From Octopus sinensis (Eukaryota): DNA of 12,048 nucleotides. Positions 2,280-11,690 of this stretch are shown one piece after another. The stretch spans positions 1 to 12,048 of the forward strand of contig NW_021826819.1 of the NCBI RefSeq assembly GCF_006345805.1, read 5' to 3'. The position numbers and the translations under genes were made by a program. The notes below the pieces were generated by a model. The model worked only from the letters and a program-made list of their open reading frames with translations. It ran no database searches and was not told the DNA's origin. Each line of letters opens with the position of its first letter. Position 1 is the stretch's first letter.

Positions 2280-2648
2280 GCTGAGAGGATAGAGGGCAGT
2301 ATTTGTTAGGGGTAGGGCTGAGAGAGTAGACAGACATTCTAGTTGGTATAGTCATAAAAAAATCAAGATTATTATAAGCAATATCATGAGGATTAGTAAG
2401 GGAAAACTTAAAACAAGATGTTAAGGGGGTCGTCCACTAGAAGACTATCGATAATGAAGCAGGGGAAGTCTTATTGTTAAATATTTTAAACAATGTTGCT
2501 ATGTATACAGTTAAAGTTTAGGGTTATTTAAAGGATTATTAAGAAGAATATTATAAGAAATGGATAGAACTTTATGAATACTTTTGAGTATATACCAAAC
2601 TCTTACCACAATAGAAGGAGGAAAAGAAATTATCCAGAAATAGTTTAA
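2280..2648 (+). pseudogene. Decayed coding relic, copy 1 (paralogous to 3240-3520), possibly a non-LTR ORF2 C-terminus
   Basis: Translates as TRRLSIMKQG...LKFRVI*RIIKKNIIRNG*NFMNTFEYIPN...TIEGGKE.YPEIV*, with stops and frameshifts. It aligns to copy 2. Confidence 0.4.
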
Positions 2649-2687
2649 TATTTATACATATTGTATACTTAAATACTAACTCATCTG

Positions 2688-3520
2688 ATGGTATCTGTGA
2701 ATATTGATTATATATATTGGTATATACTGGTATTAATAAAGGAGTATTGGGGTAAAGGAATATGCTAATTATATATTAATAAAATTTTAATCTAAGCAGT
2801 TTTTCATAAGTAGTGAATATTACAGTATGGTTTTATATAAGTTAAGTATGAATTTATAGATACAAAAATTAGATTAATATTATAAATAAAGGTTAATTAT
2901 AAAATAATAAAGAAATGAAATAAAATAATCAAGTTAGGCAGAACAGCACAGAAAAGGAATAAAAGAGCTTAATCACTAAAACTATGATAAAGTATATGTA
3001 GCTTATTAACACCAATAGAGAAGATTTATAGAAAATGTATAATAATTCAAAATATATTAGACTAAAAATTATATATTTACTTATTTAGCTAATATCAATA
3101 AAAGACTGATGTTTGGTATCGGTTAAAGGGATATTTAAGTTATGTGACATTCATATTTTACACTAATTTTTTTAAACTAAGGGTTTTATTATAGGTTTAA
3201 GAAGTTATTATTGTTACTCCCTACATGATATTTATAGTTACTTAGTGGTACTTGTTTAGAAGGGTTATTTATACAAAGGCCTTTATAAATACTAAGACCA
3301 GGAGGATAGAGCTCTTTAAGAAAGGGATAAATCAAGTAATTTCTAAAGATCACTTCAAACAATATTGTCTTATTGTATAAAGTTAAAATTTAGGATAATC
3401 AAGAAGATTATTAAGAATGAAATTTTAACAAAAGGATATAACTTCTTAGAATATTTTGAGTACATACCAAATTTTATCACAATAGAGGGAGGAAAAGAAA
3501 ATTACAAAGAAATAGTTTAA
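2688..3520 (+). pseudogene. Decayed coding relic, copy 2, possibly an L1/Tx1-type ORF2 C-terminus
   Basis: Open frame 3347-3520 ends KLKFRIIKKIIKNEILTKGYNFLEYFEYIPNFITIEGGKENYKEIV*. Upstream, ...KCIIIQN...VWYRLKGYL loosely recalls an L1 zinc-knuckle region but carries many stops. A (TAG)n run follows the stop. Confidence 0.4.
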
Positions 3521-3528
3521 TATTTATT

Positions 3529-5120: not shown

Positions 5121-5163
5121 AATAATGATAATAATAATAATAATAATAATAATATAATATATA

Positions 5164-5328
5164 GGCACAGGAGTGGCTGGGTGGTAAGTAGCTTGCTAAC
5201 CAACCACATGGTTCCAGGTTCAGTCCCACTGCGTGGCATCTTGGGCAAGTGTCTTCTGCTATAGCCCCGGGCCGACCAATGCCTTGTGAGTGGATTTGGT
5301 AGACGGAAACTGAAAGAAGACTGTCGTA

Positions 5329-5371
<43 letters not shown>

Positions 5372-5580
5372 TTGTGTGTCTGTGTTTGTCCCCCTAGCAT
5401 TGCTTGACAACCGATGCTGGTGCATTTACGTCCCCGTCACTTAGCAGTTCGGCAAAAGAGACCGATAGAATAAGTACTGGGCTTACAAAGAATAAGTCCC
5501 GGGGTTGATTTATCGACTAAAGGCGGTGCTCCAGCATGGCCGCAGTCAAATGACTGAAACAAGTAAAAGAGTAAAGAGTA
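5164..5580 (+). mobile_element. Full-length tRNA-derived SINE (Octopus-type, CORE-like centre)
   Basis: A-box-like TGGCTGGGTGGT (5174-5185), B-box GGTTCAGTCCC (5217-5227), CORE-like TTGGGCAAGTGTCTT, an internal (TA)n(TG)n run and an A-rich repeat tail. Homologous copies lie at 6500, 7151, 9676 and 11470. Confidence 0.92.
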
Positions 5581-5603
5581 TATATATATGTATGTATGTA
5601 TAT

Positions 5604-6195: not shown

Positions 6196-6499
6196 AACAC
6201 ACATACTTAATGTGTGTGCTTTGTTTGTTCACTGTTAGGCTGTGATTTGATGCAATACAGATGATTCTCTCAAAGCAATGGGATTTAAAACACCTGAAAG
6301 TCATAGGCAAGCAAAACAACTTACCCAAATCACATCGAGGAGTGATAGACACCAATGTTTACCTATTTTTGTGGCATATCAACATCACATGTGTTTGATA
6401 AATTGCATCCAATCAGCAAACAACCAATGCTCATACATTGATTATGTGTGTTCTATAATGTTTACAATATTACACTATTTCTAATTCATAACTAAATAT

Positions 6500-6912
6500 G
6501 TTCTTTTATTCTTTTATTCTTTTCAGTCATTTGACTGTGACCATGTGGGAGCACCACCTTAAAGGTTCTTTTAATCGAAGAAATCAACCCTAGGACTTAT
6601 TCTTTGTAAGCCTAGTACTTATTCTATTGACTGTTTTGCCAAACTGCTAAGTTACAGGGTCCTAAACACACCAGCATTGTCAAGTGATGGTGGGGGAACA
6701 AACACAGACACACACATAAATGCACACACACACACATGTTTATGCAATGGGCTTCTTTCAGCTTCCATCTACCTAATACACTCACAAGGCTTTGGTTACC
6801 CTGAGGCTATAGTGACAGACACTTGCCCAATGTGCCATACAGTAGGACGGCACCTGGAACCATGTCATTGGGTTGGGAAGCAAGCTTCTTACCACACCAT
6901 TGTGCCTGTGCC
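6500..6912 (-). mobile_element. Near full-length, diverged tRNA-derived SINE (same family as 5164-5580)
   Basis: Reverse complement of the head, CORE-like region (GACACTTGCCCAA), internal (CA)n and 3' end (TTTCAGTCATTTGACTGTGACCATG). Confidence 0.9.
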
Positions 6913-6913
6913 T

Positions 6914-6957
<44 letters not shown>

Positions 6958-7150
6958 CATGCAAGGGCCAAAATTCAGCCCATTGCATGGTGAGCCTAGA
7001 ATCAACACTAGGAACAGCCAACATCCAACAGAAAGCACATTCACAAGATGAATTCATGTGTTACACTTTGCATAACTCATACCCAACACAATGAACACTT
7101 CATGAAATCACACAAACAACGCAATACATATATAAAATATATGCTACATA

Positions 7151-7335
7151 GGCGTAGGAGTGGCTGTGCGGTAAGTAGCTTGCTTACAAACCACATGGTT
7201 CCAGGTACAGTTCCACTGCATGGTATCTTGGGCAAGTGTCTTCTACTATAGCTTCGGGCCAACCAAAGCCTTGTGAATGGATTTGGTAGACGGAAACTGA
7301 AAGAAGACTGTCATATATATGTAAATATATATATG
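7151..7335 (+). mobile_element. 5' half of the tRNA-derived SINE
   Basis: GGCGTAGGAGTGGCTGTGCGGTAAG...TTGGGCAAGTGTCTT...CTGAAAGAAGACTGTC is nearly identical to 5164-5330. It is truncated at the TA run. Confidence 0.92.
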
Positions 7336-8060: not shown

Positions 8061-8162
<102 letters not shown>

Positions 8163-8584
8163 CATCACACAAACAAGCCTCCACAGGAATGCAACACACA
8201 TACACACACTCAATCACATACACATGCACTAACAAACCATGCAAAAAACACACCGCCTATATATATATGAGTGTGTGTGTGTATATATATGTATATATGT
8301 GCATGTAGTGTGTATGTATGTATGTATGTATGTATGTATGTGTGTATGTATATATATATATATATATATTATAATATAGGGTGGCAAGGAAAATTTTGTA
8401 GAATTTTATTGCCCACCCGGCCCAGTGGAAAAATTAAATAGTCATAGACCATTTTTAAGTTCAACGTAACAATTAAGGAACGGCCATAATAGGCCATTCA
8501 CCCACTAGAATAACAGCCAAAGCTTCTACCGCAAATAAAGATTAATTCCGTAAACGGAGAAAATAAAAAAACATTTACCCTGTA

Positions 8585-8689
8585 ATTTCTTGTACGGTAT
8601 AACATTTCATCCGCTGTTAATGGTAAACTAACATGATTAAATTAATCAAGCCAATCTTCCATAAGCCCTCGGATTCTTCAGCAAGAAAT
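8585..8689 (-). ncRNA. Type I hammerhead (family D, copy 1), stem III mutated
   Basis: AUUUCUUG-CUGAAGA-AUCCG...CGGAU-GAAAUGUUAUACCGUA-CAAGAAAU. Two substitutions break the stem III palindrome. Confidence 0.75.
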
Positions 8690-9071
8690 AGCTCAAGTTG
8701 GAACAGATATTTACACGAGGCATACCCAATCTGCCAAGTCAATATCTGACCTAAAATTTTCAAATCGTCGCACTCGCACCAAATTTATCGGCAGCAAATA
8801 AATATCAGCCGTCGATTCCATTACGGAATTAACCAAAAATTCATATTTAATCCATAATAGGGTGGCAAGGAAATTTTTGTAGAATTTTATTGCCACCAGC
8901 GGCCCAGTGGGAAAAATTAAATAGTCATAGACCATTTTTAAGTTCAACAGTAACAATTAAGGAACGGCCATAATAGGCCATTCACCCACTAGAAATAACA
9001 GCCAAAGCTTCTACCGCAAATAAAGATTAATTCCGTAAACAGGAGAAAATTAAAAAAACATTTACCCTGTA

Positions 9072-9178
9072 ATTTCTTGTACGGTATACCGTTTCATCCG
9101 CTGTTTAATGGTAAACTAACATGATTAAATTAAATCAAGCCAATCTTCCATAAGCCCTCGGATTCTTCAGCAAGAAAT
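9072..9178 (-). ncRNA. Type I hammerhead ribozyme (family D, copy 2), apparently intact
   Basis: AUUUCUUG-CUGAAGA-AUCCG-(58 nt)-CGGAU-GAAACGGUAUACCGUA-CAAGAAAU. Stem I is 8 bp, stem II is 5 bp and stem III is a perfect 12-nt palindrome. Predicted cleavage is after GUA, between 9080 and 9079. Confidence 0.87.
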
Positions 9179-9610
9179 AGCTCAAGTTGGAACAGATATT
9201 TACACGAGGCATACCCAATCTTGCCAAGTCAATATCTATATGTATATATGTATATATGTATGTATGTATGTATGTTTATATGTATGTGTATGCACCTATT
9301 TATATGTATATATGTGTATATATACAGACAAGGGAAACACAAACACACAAACACACACATAACAATACACAACAGAAGGAACTCGATATGAAAGGTAAAA
9401 CAACACCAGGGACCCCTCTTGGGGGATCCAACATTATGTCTCACTTCCTGTTCCCGTTACCAACAATAGCTATGGAGCACTACATGAACATGCATGTGCA
9501 TGTACGCATACACAAACACACATACACACACTCATCTGTGTGCATGCATGTAGCATTTGTACACATATAAGTATATTTGTGAATGTGAGGGTATATATGT
9601 AGGAGTATGA

Positions 9611-9651
<41 letters not shown>

Positions 9652-9675
9652 TGTGTGTGTATGTGTGTGTGGATA

Positions 9676-9838
9676 GTCACAGGCATGGCTGTGTTGTAAG
9701 AAGCTTGCTTCCTAACCACACAGTTCCAGGTTCAGTCCCACCGCATGGGACCCTGGGCAAGTGTCTTCTATTATAGTCTCAGGCTGACCAAAGCCCTGTG
9801 AGTGGATTTGGTTGGCAGACACTGAAAGAAGCATGTTA

Positions 9839-9883
<45 letters not shown>

Positions 9884-9980
9884 AGTACTAGGCTTACAAA
9901 GAATAAGTCCTGGAGTTGATTTGCTCGACTAAAGGCAGTGCTCCAGCATGGCCACAGTCACATGACCGAAACAAGTAAAT
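9676..9980 (+). mobile_element. tRNA-derived SINE with an internal deletion
   Basis: The head, B-box GGTTCAGTCCC, CORE-like region and 3' end are present. The ~95 bp after the (GT)n run seen in the 5164 copy are missing. Confidence 0.9.
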
Positions 9981-10072
9981 ATATATATATATATATATAT
10001 AATAACGAAATAATAAATAAAACACATGCATATATACATACATATATGTACTTACCTACATGTATATGTATA

Positions 10073-11469: not shown

Positions 11470-11474
<5 letters not shown>

Positions 11475-11657
11475 ACTTGTTTTAGTCATTACACTGCAGC
11501 CATGCTGGGGCACCGCCTTGAAGAACTTTAGTCGGACGAATTGACACCCAGTACTTATTCTGTCGGTCTCCTTTGCCGAACTGCTATGTTACGGGGACAT
11601 AAACACACCAACACAAGTTGTCAAGCGGTACTGGACTACAAAGACAAATACACACAC

Positions 11658-11690
<33 letters not shown>
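11470..11690 (-). mobile_element. 3' half of the tRNA-derived SINE
   Basis: TTTTACTTGTTTTAGTCATT...GCCATGCTGGGGCACCGCC...AGTACTTATTC...TTTGCCGAACTGCT is the reverse complement of 5390-5570. Confidence 0.88.

What the first reader, a model, noticed from the sequence alone, without database searches (positions are those of the whole stretch)
8376..9237. Retrozyme-like tandem: two ~375-bp direct repeats, each with a hammerhead, predicting a ~487-nt self-excising RNA
Seen: repeats 8376-8747 and 8857-9237 flank a 109-bp unique core, and predicted cut sites (after 9080 and after 8593 on the minus strand) are 487 nt apart. No credible ORF is present and the element sits in TA microsatellite. Established: retrozymes are non-coding retroelements whose tandem HHRs release monomers that circularise, and palindromic stem III allows two tandem HHRs to act as a dimer. 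Inference: a cephalopod retrozyme or non-autonomous Penelope derivative producing a ~0.49-kb linear or circular RNA.
Basis: partly seen in the sequence, partly recalled or inferred. Interest (0 to 1): 0.92.

Follow-up and report, generated by a model that had tools for sequence, protein, structure and literature searches.

The report
Hammerhead-ribozyme retroelement dimer in a microsatellite
A ~485-base non-coding mobile element carrying a self-cutting hammerhead RNA motif sits as 1.8 head-to-tail copies inside a TA-rich microsatellite; it is a plausible new example of the known animal "retrozyme" class, not a new kind of thing.

Summary
Repeats 8376-8747 and 8857-9237 flank a 109-bp core (8748-8856). 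They differ by 3 substitutions and 10 small indels.

On the minus strand each repeat carries a complete type I hammerhead: helix I of 8 bp, CUGAAGA, helix II AUCCG/CGGAU with a ~58-nt structured extension, GAAA, a palindromic helix III, and GUA|C. The cut sites fall after 9080 and 8593, 487 nt apart.

My descriptor found only these two motifs in the window. It found none of equal quality in 36,216 shuffled windows. The canonical three-way junction is the minimum-energy fold.

Read on the minus strand, the locus is a 5'-truncated unit followed by a full unit. It splits one (TATATATG)n microsatellite and has no ORF, LTR ends, primer-binding site or polypurine tract. That matches a non-LTR retrozyme or non-autonomous Penelope-like insertion.

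Weak points:
- Rfam Hammerhead_1 scores 21.4 and 17.3 bits, below the gathering score of 34.
- The 10.1-11.1 pair is A-U, not G-C.
- The left copy's helix III carries two mutations.
- I found no relatives, so copy number, covariation, expression and the cephalopod host are all untested.

The parts
8282..8378 (.). Left flank: (TATATATG)n/(TA)n microsatellite. It is the 3' flank of the element as read on the minus strand.
   Evidence: TRF period 8, 10.6 copies; sequence read.
8376..8747 (-). Left repeat copy (L). It is the 3' three-quarters of the downstream, full-length unit.
   Evidence: Pairs with 8857-9237 at 96.3%; 3 substitutions and 10 indel events.
8748..8856 (-). 109-bp segment present once. 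It is the 5' part of the full unit and is missing from the 5'-truncated upstream unit.
   Evidence: Alignment. It has no match elsewhere in the window.
8857..9237 (-). Right repeat copy (R). It is the upstream, 5'-truncated unit.
   Evidence: Homology starts at AGATATTGAC, directly after the microsatellite.
9072..9178 (-). Hammerhead R. Helix I 5' strand 9178-9171 (AUUUCUUG); CUGAAGA 9170-9164; helix II AUCCG 9163-9159 and CGGAU 9100-9096 with a 58-nt structured extension between them; GAAA 9095-9092; helix III A-CGGUAUACCG-U 9092-9081; A17 at 9080; helix I 3' strand 9079-9072 (CAAGAAAU).
   Evidence: Descriptor hit with helices 8/5/4; Rfam RF00163 21.4 bits, E 0.0042 to 0.025; the minimum-energy fold is the three-way junction, z = -3.9.
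8585..8689 (-). Hammerhead L. The layout and core are the same: CUGAAGA 8681-8675, GAAA 8608-8605, A17 at 8593. Helix III reads A-UGUUAUACCG-U, weakened by two substitutions (+ strand 8602 and 8604).
   Evidence: Descriptor hit with helices 8/5/3; RF00163 17.3 bits, E 0.092; substitutions listed.
8593..9079 (-). Predicted 487-nt monomer RNA released by cleavage 3' of A17 at both hammerheads (GUA|CAAG).
   Evidence: Cut sites. The linear fold has z = -5.4 (folded one base out of register, 9080 to 8594). The circular fold is -136.6 kcal/mol, z = -5.6, 62% paired.
8379..8418 (-). Hairpin at the 3' end of the element (GGGUGGGCAA...UUGCCACCC), directly before the UA-rich end. The same hairpin lies at 8861-8897 in copy R.
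   Evidence: Read from the sequence. It is predicted in the monomer fold.
8821..8834 (-). Core-side strand (GGUUAAUUCCGUAA) of a 14-bp long-range helix. It pairs with UUACGGAAUUAAUC at 9025-9038.
   Evidence: Predicted in the linear and circular folds. It contains a 12-bp perfect inverted repeat readable.
9025..9038 (-). Repeat-side strand of the same long-range helix. The same sequence also occurs in copy L at about 8540-8553.
9237..9321 (.). Right flank: (TATATGTA)n/(TATG)n microsatellite. Its 8-mer is a rotation of the 8-mer in the left flank.
   Evidence: TRF period 8, 10.6 copies; flanks printed.

Best explanation
This is a genomic insertion of a non-coding retroelement of about 485 nt that carries a hammerhead ribozyme. 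It belongs to the animal non-LTR retrozyme / non-autonomous Penelope-like kind.

Shown from the sequence: the sense strand is the window's minus strand. The insertion holds 1.77 head-to-tail units, a 5'-truncated unit (9237 to 8857) followed by a full unit (8856 to about 8376). It interrupts a single (TATATATG)n microsatellite.

Inferred mechanism:
1. A minus-strand transcript spanning both units folds two type I hammerheads. They could act singly, or as a double hammerhead in which the 12-nt palindrome ACGGUAUACCGU forms an extended helix III.
2. The transcript cuts itself after GUA at 9080 and 8593. This releases a 487-nt RNA with a 5'-OH and a 2',3'-cyclic phosphate.
3. By analogy with published retrozymes, a host tRNA ligase would circularise this RNA.
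4. A reverse transcriptase supplied in trans, most likely from a Penelope-like element that targets TA microsatellites, would copy it into tandem cDNA at new TA-rich sites. Microhomology is available at both ends: UAU at the 3' end and AGAUAU at the 5' truncation point.

This particular copy is probably a recent but partly decayed insertion, because helix III of the downstream hammerhead carries two mutations.
For: 1. All hammerhead core positions are present in both copies: C3 U4 G5 A6 N7 G8 A9, G12 A13 A14, A15.1-U16.1, H17 = A, and C1.1-G2.1. Three helices surround the core in type I topology. The canonical junction is the minimum-energy fold of the 119-nt context (-32.8 kcal/mol, z = -3.9).
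2. The motif occurs only in the two repeats. No motif of equal quality appeared in 36,216 shuffled windows or in 5,000 shuffles of the element.
3. No ribozyme was found on the plus strand.
4. Head-to-tail units with a fractional copy number and a 5'-truncated upstream unit are what reverse transcription produces. They are the pseudo-LTR layout of Penelope-like elements (PMC8557442) and the tandem layout of retrozymes (PMC7229834).
5. The same microsatellite lies on both sides. (TA)n targeting is reported for Naiad Penelope-like elements and a microsatellite bias for Neptune ones (PMC8557442).
6. There is no ORF and no protein-family match. GC is 36%.
7. The monomer is strongly self-paired (z = -5.4 linear, -5.6 circular), as described for retrozyme circular RNAs (PMC7229834).
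8. Cofolding favours the double hammerhead: R+R -78.6 against -65.6 kcal/mol for two monomers, and R+L -69.6 against -60.1. The dimer form could therefore compensate for L's weak helix III.
9. The unit length falls within published ranges: 150-450 bp (PMC7229834), 51-972 bp (bioRxiv 10.64898/2026.07.22.740005), and about 500 bp for the cricket pDo500 hammerhead repeat (PMC2837043).
Against: - Rfam Hammerhead_1 is below its gathering score in both copies (21.4 and 17.3 bits against 34). The roughly 68-nt helix II accounts for at least part of the shortfall.
- The 10.1-11.1 pair is A-U, whereas G-C is highly conserved in canonical and Penelope-like hammerheads (PMC4209133).
- No loop 1/loop 2 tertiary contact can be recognised.
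- Copy L has two substitutions in helix III.
- This is a single locus. Pattern scans of viral, metagenome and prokaryote-genome contigs returned either nothing or chance hits. ORF-based protein searches returned nothing. So multi-copy status, covariation and a cognate Penelope-like element are untested.
- At whole-genome scale a few chance motifs of fair quality are expected. The >=6/4/3 class occurs at about 8e-5 per 12 kb.
- Nothing is known about transcription or cleavage.
Confidence: 0.7

Rival explanations
1. The hammerhead-like motif arose by chance in a non-functional local repeat, such as a partial segmental duplication of unique DNA between microsatellites. No ribozyme or retroelement is involved.
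For: The Rfam score is below gathering. The 10.1-11.1 pair is non-canonical. No relatives were found. Loose motifs occur at 0.009 per 12-kb window, which means thousands per Gb-sized genome. The two copies are not independent observations.
Against: No motif with helices 8/5/3 or better appeared in 36,216 shuffles. The canonical fold is the minimum-energy structure. The motif coincides with a tandem unit of retrozyme size. A plain tandem duplication gives whole copies, not 1.77 copies bounded on both sides by one microsatellite. The RNA is strongly structured, including a 14-bp long-range helix.
Confidence: 0.12
2. It is a SINE-like passenger of a microsatellite-specific LINE (for example an R4/Dong-type element) rather than of a Penelope-like element. 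The LINE RT would recognise the 3'-terminal hairpin and the TA-rich tail. The hammerhead would only process the transcript.
For: A 3'-terminal hairpin sits directly before the TA-rich end (8379-8418). 5' truncation is typical of target-primed reverse transcription. The authors of PMC7229834 leave LINEs open as possible mobilisers. Dong-R4 LINEs are abundant in one octopus genome (PMC13282606), if the host is an octopus. That R4-clade LINEs target microsatellites is my own background knowledge and was not tested here.
Against: Head-to-tail partial tandems combined with type I hammerheads are the signature of Penelope-like elements and retrozymes (PMC4209133, PMC8557442). No tRNA-like or other Pol III head was detected. 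No LINE sharing this 3' end is available for comparison.
Confidence: 0.08
3. The tandem is an assembly artefact. The genome holds a single unit with one hammerhead, and a mis-assembly created the second partial copy.
For: Ten of the 13 differences between the copies are 1-2 nt indels, mostly in short homopolymer runs. That pattern is typical of noisy long-read consensus. The locus lies in microsatellite DNA, which is hard to assemble.
Against: The copies also differ by 3 substitutions. Nine of the 10 indel events go in the same direction (L shorter), which random error would not produce. The upstream copy has its own distinct junction with the microsatellite.
Confidence: 0.06
4. It is a miniature LTR retrotransposon (TRIM-like or plant-type LTR retrozyme): two ~375-bp LTRs around a 109-bp internal region.
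For: Two long direct repeats flank a short unique core. Plant retrozymes carry hammerheads in LTRs of about 350 bp (PMC9695139).
Against: The repeats lack TG...CA ends in either orientation. Next to the repeats there is no GC-normal primer-binding site (only TGGATTAAATATG) and no polypurine tract (sequence). The hammerhead is type I, not the type III found in plant LTR retrozymes (PMC7229834).
Confidence: 0.03

Closest known systems
Metazoan non-LTR retrozymes (Cervera & de la Pena 2020, PMC7229834), e.g. the 350-390 bp repeats of Mytilus galloprovincialis
   Same: A type I hammerhead in every unit; head-to-tail units of a few hundred bp; no ORF, LTR, primer-binding site or polypurine tract; GC below 50%; a highly self-paired predicted RNA; the hammerhead on one polarity only.
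   Different: The unit (about 485 nt) is longer than the 170-400 nt quoted there. Only 1.77 units are seen. Helix II is about 68 nt long instead of about 4 bp plus a loop. The 10.1-11.1 pair is A-U. No loop 1/loop 2 contacts can be recognised. Expression and copy number are unknown.
Pseudo-LTRs and minimal hammerheads of Penelope-like elements (Cervera & de la Pena 2014, PMC4209133; Craig et al. 2021, PMC8557442)
   Same: A partial-tandem layout in which the repeated segment carries the hammerhead; a palindromic helix III suited to dimeric cleavage; insertion into a TA-type microsatellite.
   Different: No RT/GIY-YIG ORF lies in the unit or anywhere in the window. Helix III is a stable 4-bp stem plus tetraloop rather than 0-2 bp. 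[quoted passage not shown] Naiads, the clade reported to target (TA)n and to occur in cephalopods, lack canonical hammerheads.
Hammerhead-bearing satellite repeats: cricket pDo500 (~500 bp, PMC2837043) and newt/axolotl 330-350 bp repeats (PMC7229834)
   Same: A repeat unit of similar size with one hammerhead per unit. Single and double hammerhead modes have been proposed for them. Compensatory changes at 10.1-11.1 are known in pDo500.
   Different: Those form long arrays conserved across species. This locus is a dispersed 1.77-mer inside a microsatellite.
Plant LTR retrozymes (PMC9695139)
   Same: Two direct repeats of about 350-380 bp, each with a hammerhead, around a non-coding core. The RNA released between the two cut sites circularises.
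   Different: The plant elements have type III hammerheads, a primer-binding site, a polypurine tract, 4-bp target-site duplications and a 600-1000 nt core. None of these is present here.

Membership tests
Hammerhead ribozyme, type I (Rfam RF00163) | Conserved core: CUGANGA, GAAA, A15.1-U16.1 and H17 (not G), with a C1.1-G2.1 pair | tested here: met
   Both copies read CUGAAGA ... GAAA ... U-A|C, with G2.1 preceding C3.
Hammerhead ribozyme, type I (Rfam RF00163) | Three helices around the core, with helix I open (type I topology) | tested here: met
   Helices of 8/5/4 bp (R) and 8/5/3 bp (L). The junction is the minimum-energy fold in both copies.
Hammerhead ribozyme, type I (Rfam RF00163) | Score at or above the curated gathering threshold (34 bits) | tested here: not met
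   21.4 and 17.3 bits. Nothing reached gathering score in the window. The alignment shows insertions of more than 50 nt in helix II.
Hammerhead ribozyme, type I (Rfam RF00163) | G10.1-C11.1 pair at the base of helix II | tested here: not met
   The pair is A10.1-U11.1 in both copies. It is still a base pair, and compensatory changes at this position are reported in pDo500 (PMC2837043).
Hammerhead ribozyme, type I (Rfam RF00163) | Tertiary contacts between helix I and helix II | tested here: inconclusive
   There is no loop 1, and helix II continues into a long imperfect hairpin. The mussel retrozyme hammerheads also lack the archetypal contacts (PMC7229834).
Hammerhead ribozyme, type I (Rfam RF00163) | Covariation in the helices among relatives, and self-cleavage activity | not testable with these tools
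   No relatives were retrieved. Cleavage needs a bench assay.
Metazoan non-LTR retrozyme | Head-to-tail repeats of a few hundred bp, each with a type I hammerhead | tested here: met
   1.77 units with a period of 481-489 nt and a hammerhead in each. The size is within 51-972 bp (bioRxiv 10.64898/2026.07.22.740005) and slightly above 150-450 bp (PMC7229834).
Metazoan non-LTR retrozyme | Non-coding; no LTR ends, primer-binding site or polypurine tract; GC below 50% | tested here: met
   ORFs are 81 aa or shorter with no family match. The repeat ends and junctions were read. GC is 36.3%.
Metazoan non-LTR retrozyme | Monomer RNA predicted to be stable and highly self-paired | tested here: met
   z = -5.4 for the linear fold and -5.6 for the circular fold, 62% paired.
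Metazoan non-LTR retrozyme | Many dispersed or tandem copies in the genome, alongside autonomous Penelope-like elements | not testable with these tools
   The host genome is not in any searchable collection. There is no other copy in the 12-kb window.
Metazoan non-LTR retrozyme | Expressed as linear and circular monomer RNA | not testable with these tools
   This needs RNA data or a northern blot.
Penelope-like element (autonomous) | ORF encoding a reverse transcriptase and a GIY-YIG endonuclease | tested here: not met
   No ORF exceeds 127 aa in the window, and stops occur about every 17 codons in all frames. The ORFs I submitted had no Pfam match above threshold.
Penelope-like element (autonomous) | Traits of the minimal hammerhead in pseudo-LTRs: an extra nucleotide between 9 and 10.1, G10.1-C11.1, and a palindromic 15.2-16.2/loop 3 (PMC4209133) | tested here: not met
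   Only the palindrome is present (CGGUAUACCG). There is no extra nucleotide, and the pair is A-U.
Penelope-like element (autonomous) | Partial-tandem (pseudo-LTR) insertion with a bias for microsatellites | tested here: met
   A 5'-truncated unit plus a full unit lie inside one (TATATATG)n array. This is one locus only, so a bias cannot be shown.
Plant-type LTR retrozyme / TRIM | Type III hammerhead, TG...CA LTR ends, primer-binding site, polypurine tract | tested here: not met
   The hammerhead has type I topology. The ends and junctions, read, lack these signals.

The most novel reading that the evidence does not exclude
The element could be the first recognised member of a retrozyme family that is mobilised by TA-microsatellite-targeting Penelope-like elements of the Naiad type. 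Naiads are reported in cephalopods and themselves lack hammerheads. On this reading, hammerhead-bearing parasites exploit hammerhead-less Penelope-like elements. The ribozyme would also be an unusual variant, with A10.1-U11.1, a ~68-nt helix II and a 12-nt palindromic helix III that works as an obligate double hammerhead.
Probability: 0.1. Interest if true: 0.6.

Novelty: new member of a known kind. Interest (0 to 1): 0.38.

Why it matters
If genuine and multi-copy, this would extend hammerhead retrozymes, and the circular RNAs they produce, to another animal lineage. That lineage may be cephalopods, for which I found no report.

It would also add a natural hammerhead variant with a very long helix II and an A-U 10.1-11.1 pair.

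Finally, it would be a concrete case linking retrozyme insertion to TA microsatellites. That bears on the open question of which reverse transcriptase mobilises animal retrozymes (PMC7229834; bioRxiv 10.64898/2026.07.22.740005).

As a single, partly decayed locus it is mainly an annotation point: the locus should be masked or annotated as a retrozyme / non-autonomous Penelope-like element.

Tried and rejected
- Rfam at gathering score over the whole window gave nothing. In the permissive search the only other hits on the element are weak chance matches (E of 3 to 9); the mir-297, mir-1277 and RUF3 hits lie on the flanking microsatellites.
- I looked for relatives with the pattern TTGCTGAAGAATCCG N{45,75} CGGATGAAA. 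It found nothing in viral contigs, 2 hits in metagenome contigs and 1 in prokaryote genomes. On reading them, all three lack helix III, the UH site and helix I, and the two I could place lie in ordinary-looking coding sequence. They are chance matches.
- Two further exact 20-24-mers found nothing in viral contigs.
- I searched the protein collection with spurious ORFs to reach other copies or to identify the host. Neither the 81-aa ORF of the element nor the 116-aa ORF through the neighbouring SINE-like repeat gave a hit.
- Sequence strings searched in paper texts matched only unrelated sequences such as primers. The supplement of PMC7229834 had no match, and none is held for PMC8557442.
I scanned selected ORFs instead and found nothing.
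- ARAGORN found no tRNA-like head.
- I rejected the LTR/TRIM reading: there are no TG...CA ends, no primer-binding site and no polypurine tract.
- Weak resemblances to Pol III A and B boxes are too far apart to count.
- TRF did not report the ~485-nt period because fewer than two copies are present.
Full report

Yes. The plus-strand segments 8376-8747 and 8857-9237 are direct repeats, 96.3% identical over 382 aligned columns. They are separated by 109 bp that occur only once, at 8748-8856.

A global alignment shows only 3 substitutions but 11 gap columns in 10 events. Substitution identity is therefore 99.2%, and the repeat register drifts between 481 and 489 nt. No other copy or fragment of the unit exists in the 12-kb window.

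**2. Is there a hammerhead?**

On the minus strand each repeat reads:

- helix I 5' strand AUUUCUUG
- CUGAAGA
- helix II AUCCG ... CGGAU
- GAAA
- helix III
- U-A|C
- helix I 3' strand CAAGAAAU

In the right copy (R) helix III is A-CGGUAUACCG-U, a 12-nt palindrome. In the left copy (L) it is A-UGUUAUACCG-U.

My own descriptor search found exactly these two motifs in the window and nothing else on either strand. The cleavage nucleotide A17 lies at 9080 and at 8593.

Rfam's Hammerhead_1 model aligns end to end to both copies, at 21.4 bits (9074-9176) and 17.3 bits (8587-8687). Its gathering score is 34, and at gathering threshold the window has no hit at all. The alignments show that the core boxes and all three helices match. 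They also show more than 50 inserted nucleotides in helix II.

A 119-nt context of copy R folds, as its minimum-energy structure, into the canonical three-way junction with the core unpaired. The energy is -32.8 kcal/mol, z = -3.9, and 0 of 200 shuffles fold as well. Copy L folds the same way with a 3-bp helix III.

**3. Chance**

I ran the descriptor on 36,216 dinucleotide-preserving shuffles of the whole window, both strands.

| Helix lengths required (I/II/III) | Hits in 36,216 shuffles |
|---|---|
| >=4/3/2 | 338 (0.009 per window) |
| >=5/4/3 | 21 |
| >=6/4/3 | 3 |
| >=8/5/3 (as observed) | 0 |

In 5,000 shuffles of the element alone there were 5 loose hits and none with helices >=6/4/3.

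The motif is therefore far beyond chance for one window. In a genome of gigabase size, however, a handful of fair chance motifs would exist, and the two copies here are not independent observations. The case rests on the motif together with its setting.

**4. Anatomy of the locus**

Read on the minus strand, which is the hammerhead strand, the locus consists of:

- microsatellite
- a 5'-truncated unit (9237 to 8857, 381 nt)
- a full unit (8856 to about 8376, about 481 nt, beginning with the 109-nt segment)
- microsatellite

The junction between the two units is seamless...CCUUGCCACCCUAU|UAUGGAUUAAAU... Both flanks are the same 8-mer array, (TATATATG)n at 8282-8378 and its rotation (TATATGTA)n at 9237-9321. 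The element therefore splits one microsatellite.

A target-site duplication cannot be read in such a sequence. Both ends fall on TA-like microhomology, AGAUAU at the 5' truncation point and CCCUAU at the 3' end.

The 3' end carries a hairpin (8379-8418, and also 8861-8897 in R). A 14-bp long-range helix, containing a 12-bp perfect inverted repeat, pairs the 109-nt segment (8821-8834) with the repeat (9025-9038).

The predicted 487-nt monomer is much more stable than shuffles: z = -5.4 as a linear molecule, and -136.6 kcal/mol, z = -5.6, 62% paired as a circle.

There is no coding capacity:

- The longest ORF across the element is 81 aa with a TTG start.
- No ORF I submitted has a Pfam match above threshold.
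- Every frame of the window has a stop about every 17 codons.

GC content is 36%.

**5. Mechanism**

Shown:

- the motif
- the tandem geometry
- the position of the cut sites
- the predicted folds

Inferred from published work on the family (PMC7229834, PMC4209133):

1. A minus-strand transcript through both units cuts itself 3' of A17 at each hammerhead and releases a 487-nt RNA (9079 to 8593).
2. Host tRNA ligase circularises it.
3. A reverse transcriptase supplied in trans copies the circle, or an uncleaved oligomer, into tandem cDNA at a new site.

The ends of this insertion do not coincide with the ribozyme cut site, and the cDNA runs through that site twice. The template was therefore either a ligated circle or an uncleaved multimer, not a cleaved linear monomer.

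The fractional copy number with a 5'-truncated upstream unit is what target-primed reverse transcription leaves behind. A plain tandem duplication would not give 1.77 copies bounded by one microsatellite.

Cofolding favours a double hammerhead in which the palindromes of two motifs form one long helix III.

| Pair | Cofold (kcal/mol) | Two separate monomers (kcal/mol) |
|---|---|---|
| R+R | -78.6 | -65.6 |
| R+L | -69.6 | -60.1 |

The most likely mobiliser is a Penelope-like element:

- Such elements show partial-tandem pseudo-LTRs and carry type I hammerheads.
- Neptune elements show a microsatellite bias, and Naiad elements specifically prefer (TA)n (PMC8557442).
- A 2026 preprint derives animal retrozymes from the pseudo-LTRs of these elements (10.64898/2026.07.22.740005).

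**6. State of this copy**

Two of the three substitutions between the copies lie within the 10-nt palindrome of copy L (plus strand 8602 and 8604). Copy R keeps the perfect palindrome, so it is probably closer to the source.

Nine of the ten indel events make L shorter by one base, mostly in short runs. This could be real decay, reverse-transcriptase slippage or long-read consensus noise. I cannot tell which. It is the main reason to check the reads.

**7. Comparison with known families**

The locus meets the sequence-level definition of a metazoan non-LTR retrozyme:

- a type I hammerhead per unit
- head-to-tail units of a few hundred bp
- no ORF, LTR, primer-binding site or polypurine tract
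- low GC
- a self-paired RNA

Copy number, expression and co-occurrence with Penelope-like elements could not be tested.

It is not an autonomous Penelope-like element, because no RT/GIY-YIG ORF is present. Its hammerhead also lacks two of the three traits of the minimal hammerhead of those elements: there is no extra nucleotide after position 9, and 10.1-11.1 is A-U rather than G-C. It keeps the palindromic helix III.

It is not a plant-type LTR retrozyme or TRIM, because the ribozyme is type I and there are no TG...CA ends, primer-binding site or polypurine tract.

It resembles hammerhead satellites such as cricket pDo500 (~500 bp, PMC2837043) in unit size, but it is a dispersed 1.77-mer rather than an array.

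**8. Host and novelty**

Nothing I could run identifies the organism. ORFs through the element and through the neighbouring SINE-like repeat have no relatives in the protein collection.

If the guess is right, octopus genomes do hold active Penelope-like families (PMC13282606), and Naiads occur in cephalopods (PMC8557442). I found no paper describing cephalopod retrozymes or hammerheads.

The class itself is well described across invertebrates, including molluscs. I therefore rate this as a new member of a known kind.

**9. Verdict**

| Reading | Confidence |
|---|---|
| Hammerhead-bearing non-autonomous retroelement | about 0.7 |
| Chance motif in a local repeat | 0.12 |
| LINE-mobilised SINE-like element | 0.08 |
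| Assembly artefact | 0.06 |
| LTR-type element | 0.03 |

Interest is 0.38.

Noticed in passing
window 5152-5597, 6484-6925 (inverted), 7124-7334, 9670-10000, 11471-11676 (inverted): An interspersed repeat of up to about 450 bp occurs five to six times in the window at 73-89% identity, usually next to TG, TA or CA microsatellites. It looks like a SINE-like family. ARAGORN finds no tRNA-like part, and an ORF through it has no protein relatives.
   Followed up: partly
window 2485-2655 and 3354-3527: A second direct repeat pair, 80.7% identical over 176 columns, unrelated to the element. I did not characterise it.
   Followed up: no
window 8376-8747 versus 8857-9237: The differences between the two copies are very lopsided: 10 indel events against 3 substitutions, and in 9 of the 10 indel events the left copy is one base shorter. 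This could be long-read consensus error, RT slippage or real decay.
   Followed up: partly
window 8602 and 8604 (+ strand): Two of the only three substitutions between the copies fall within 3 nt of each other, inside the helix III palindrome of the left hammerhead. One change is consistent with CpG deamination. The clustering is unexplained.
   Followed up: no
window 8310-8373 and 9236-9298: Rfam mir-297 and mir-1277 models match the (TATG)n/(TA)n flanks at 24-42 bits, against gathering scores of 81-90. These are low-complexity artefacts, not microRNA genes.
   Followed up: yes
window 8067-8162: A compound perfect microsatellite, (TC)19.5 directly followed by (TA)29, lies about 200 bp left of the element. 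The window as a whole is dense in TA, TG, TATG and CA arrays and has 35% GC.
   Followed up: no
window 8821-8834 with 9025-9038 (also 8540-8553): A 12-bp perfect inverted repeat (TTACGGAATTAA / TTAATTCCGTAA), extendable to 14 bp in RNA, links the single-copy 109-nt segment to the repeated part. It closes a large domain in the predicted monomer fold.
   Followed up: partly
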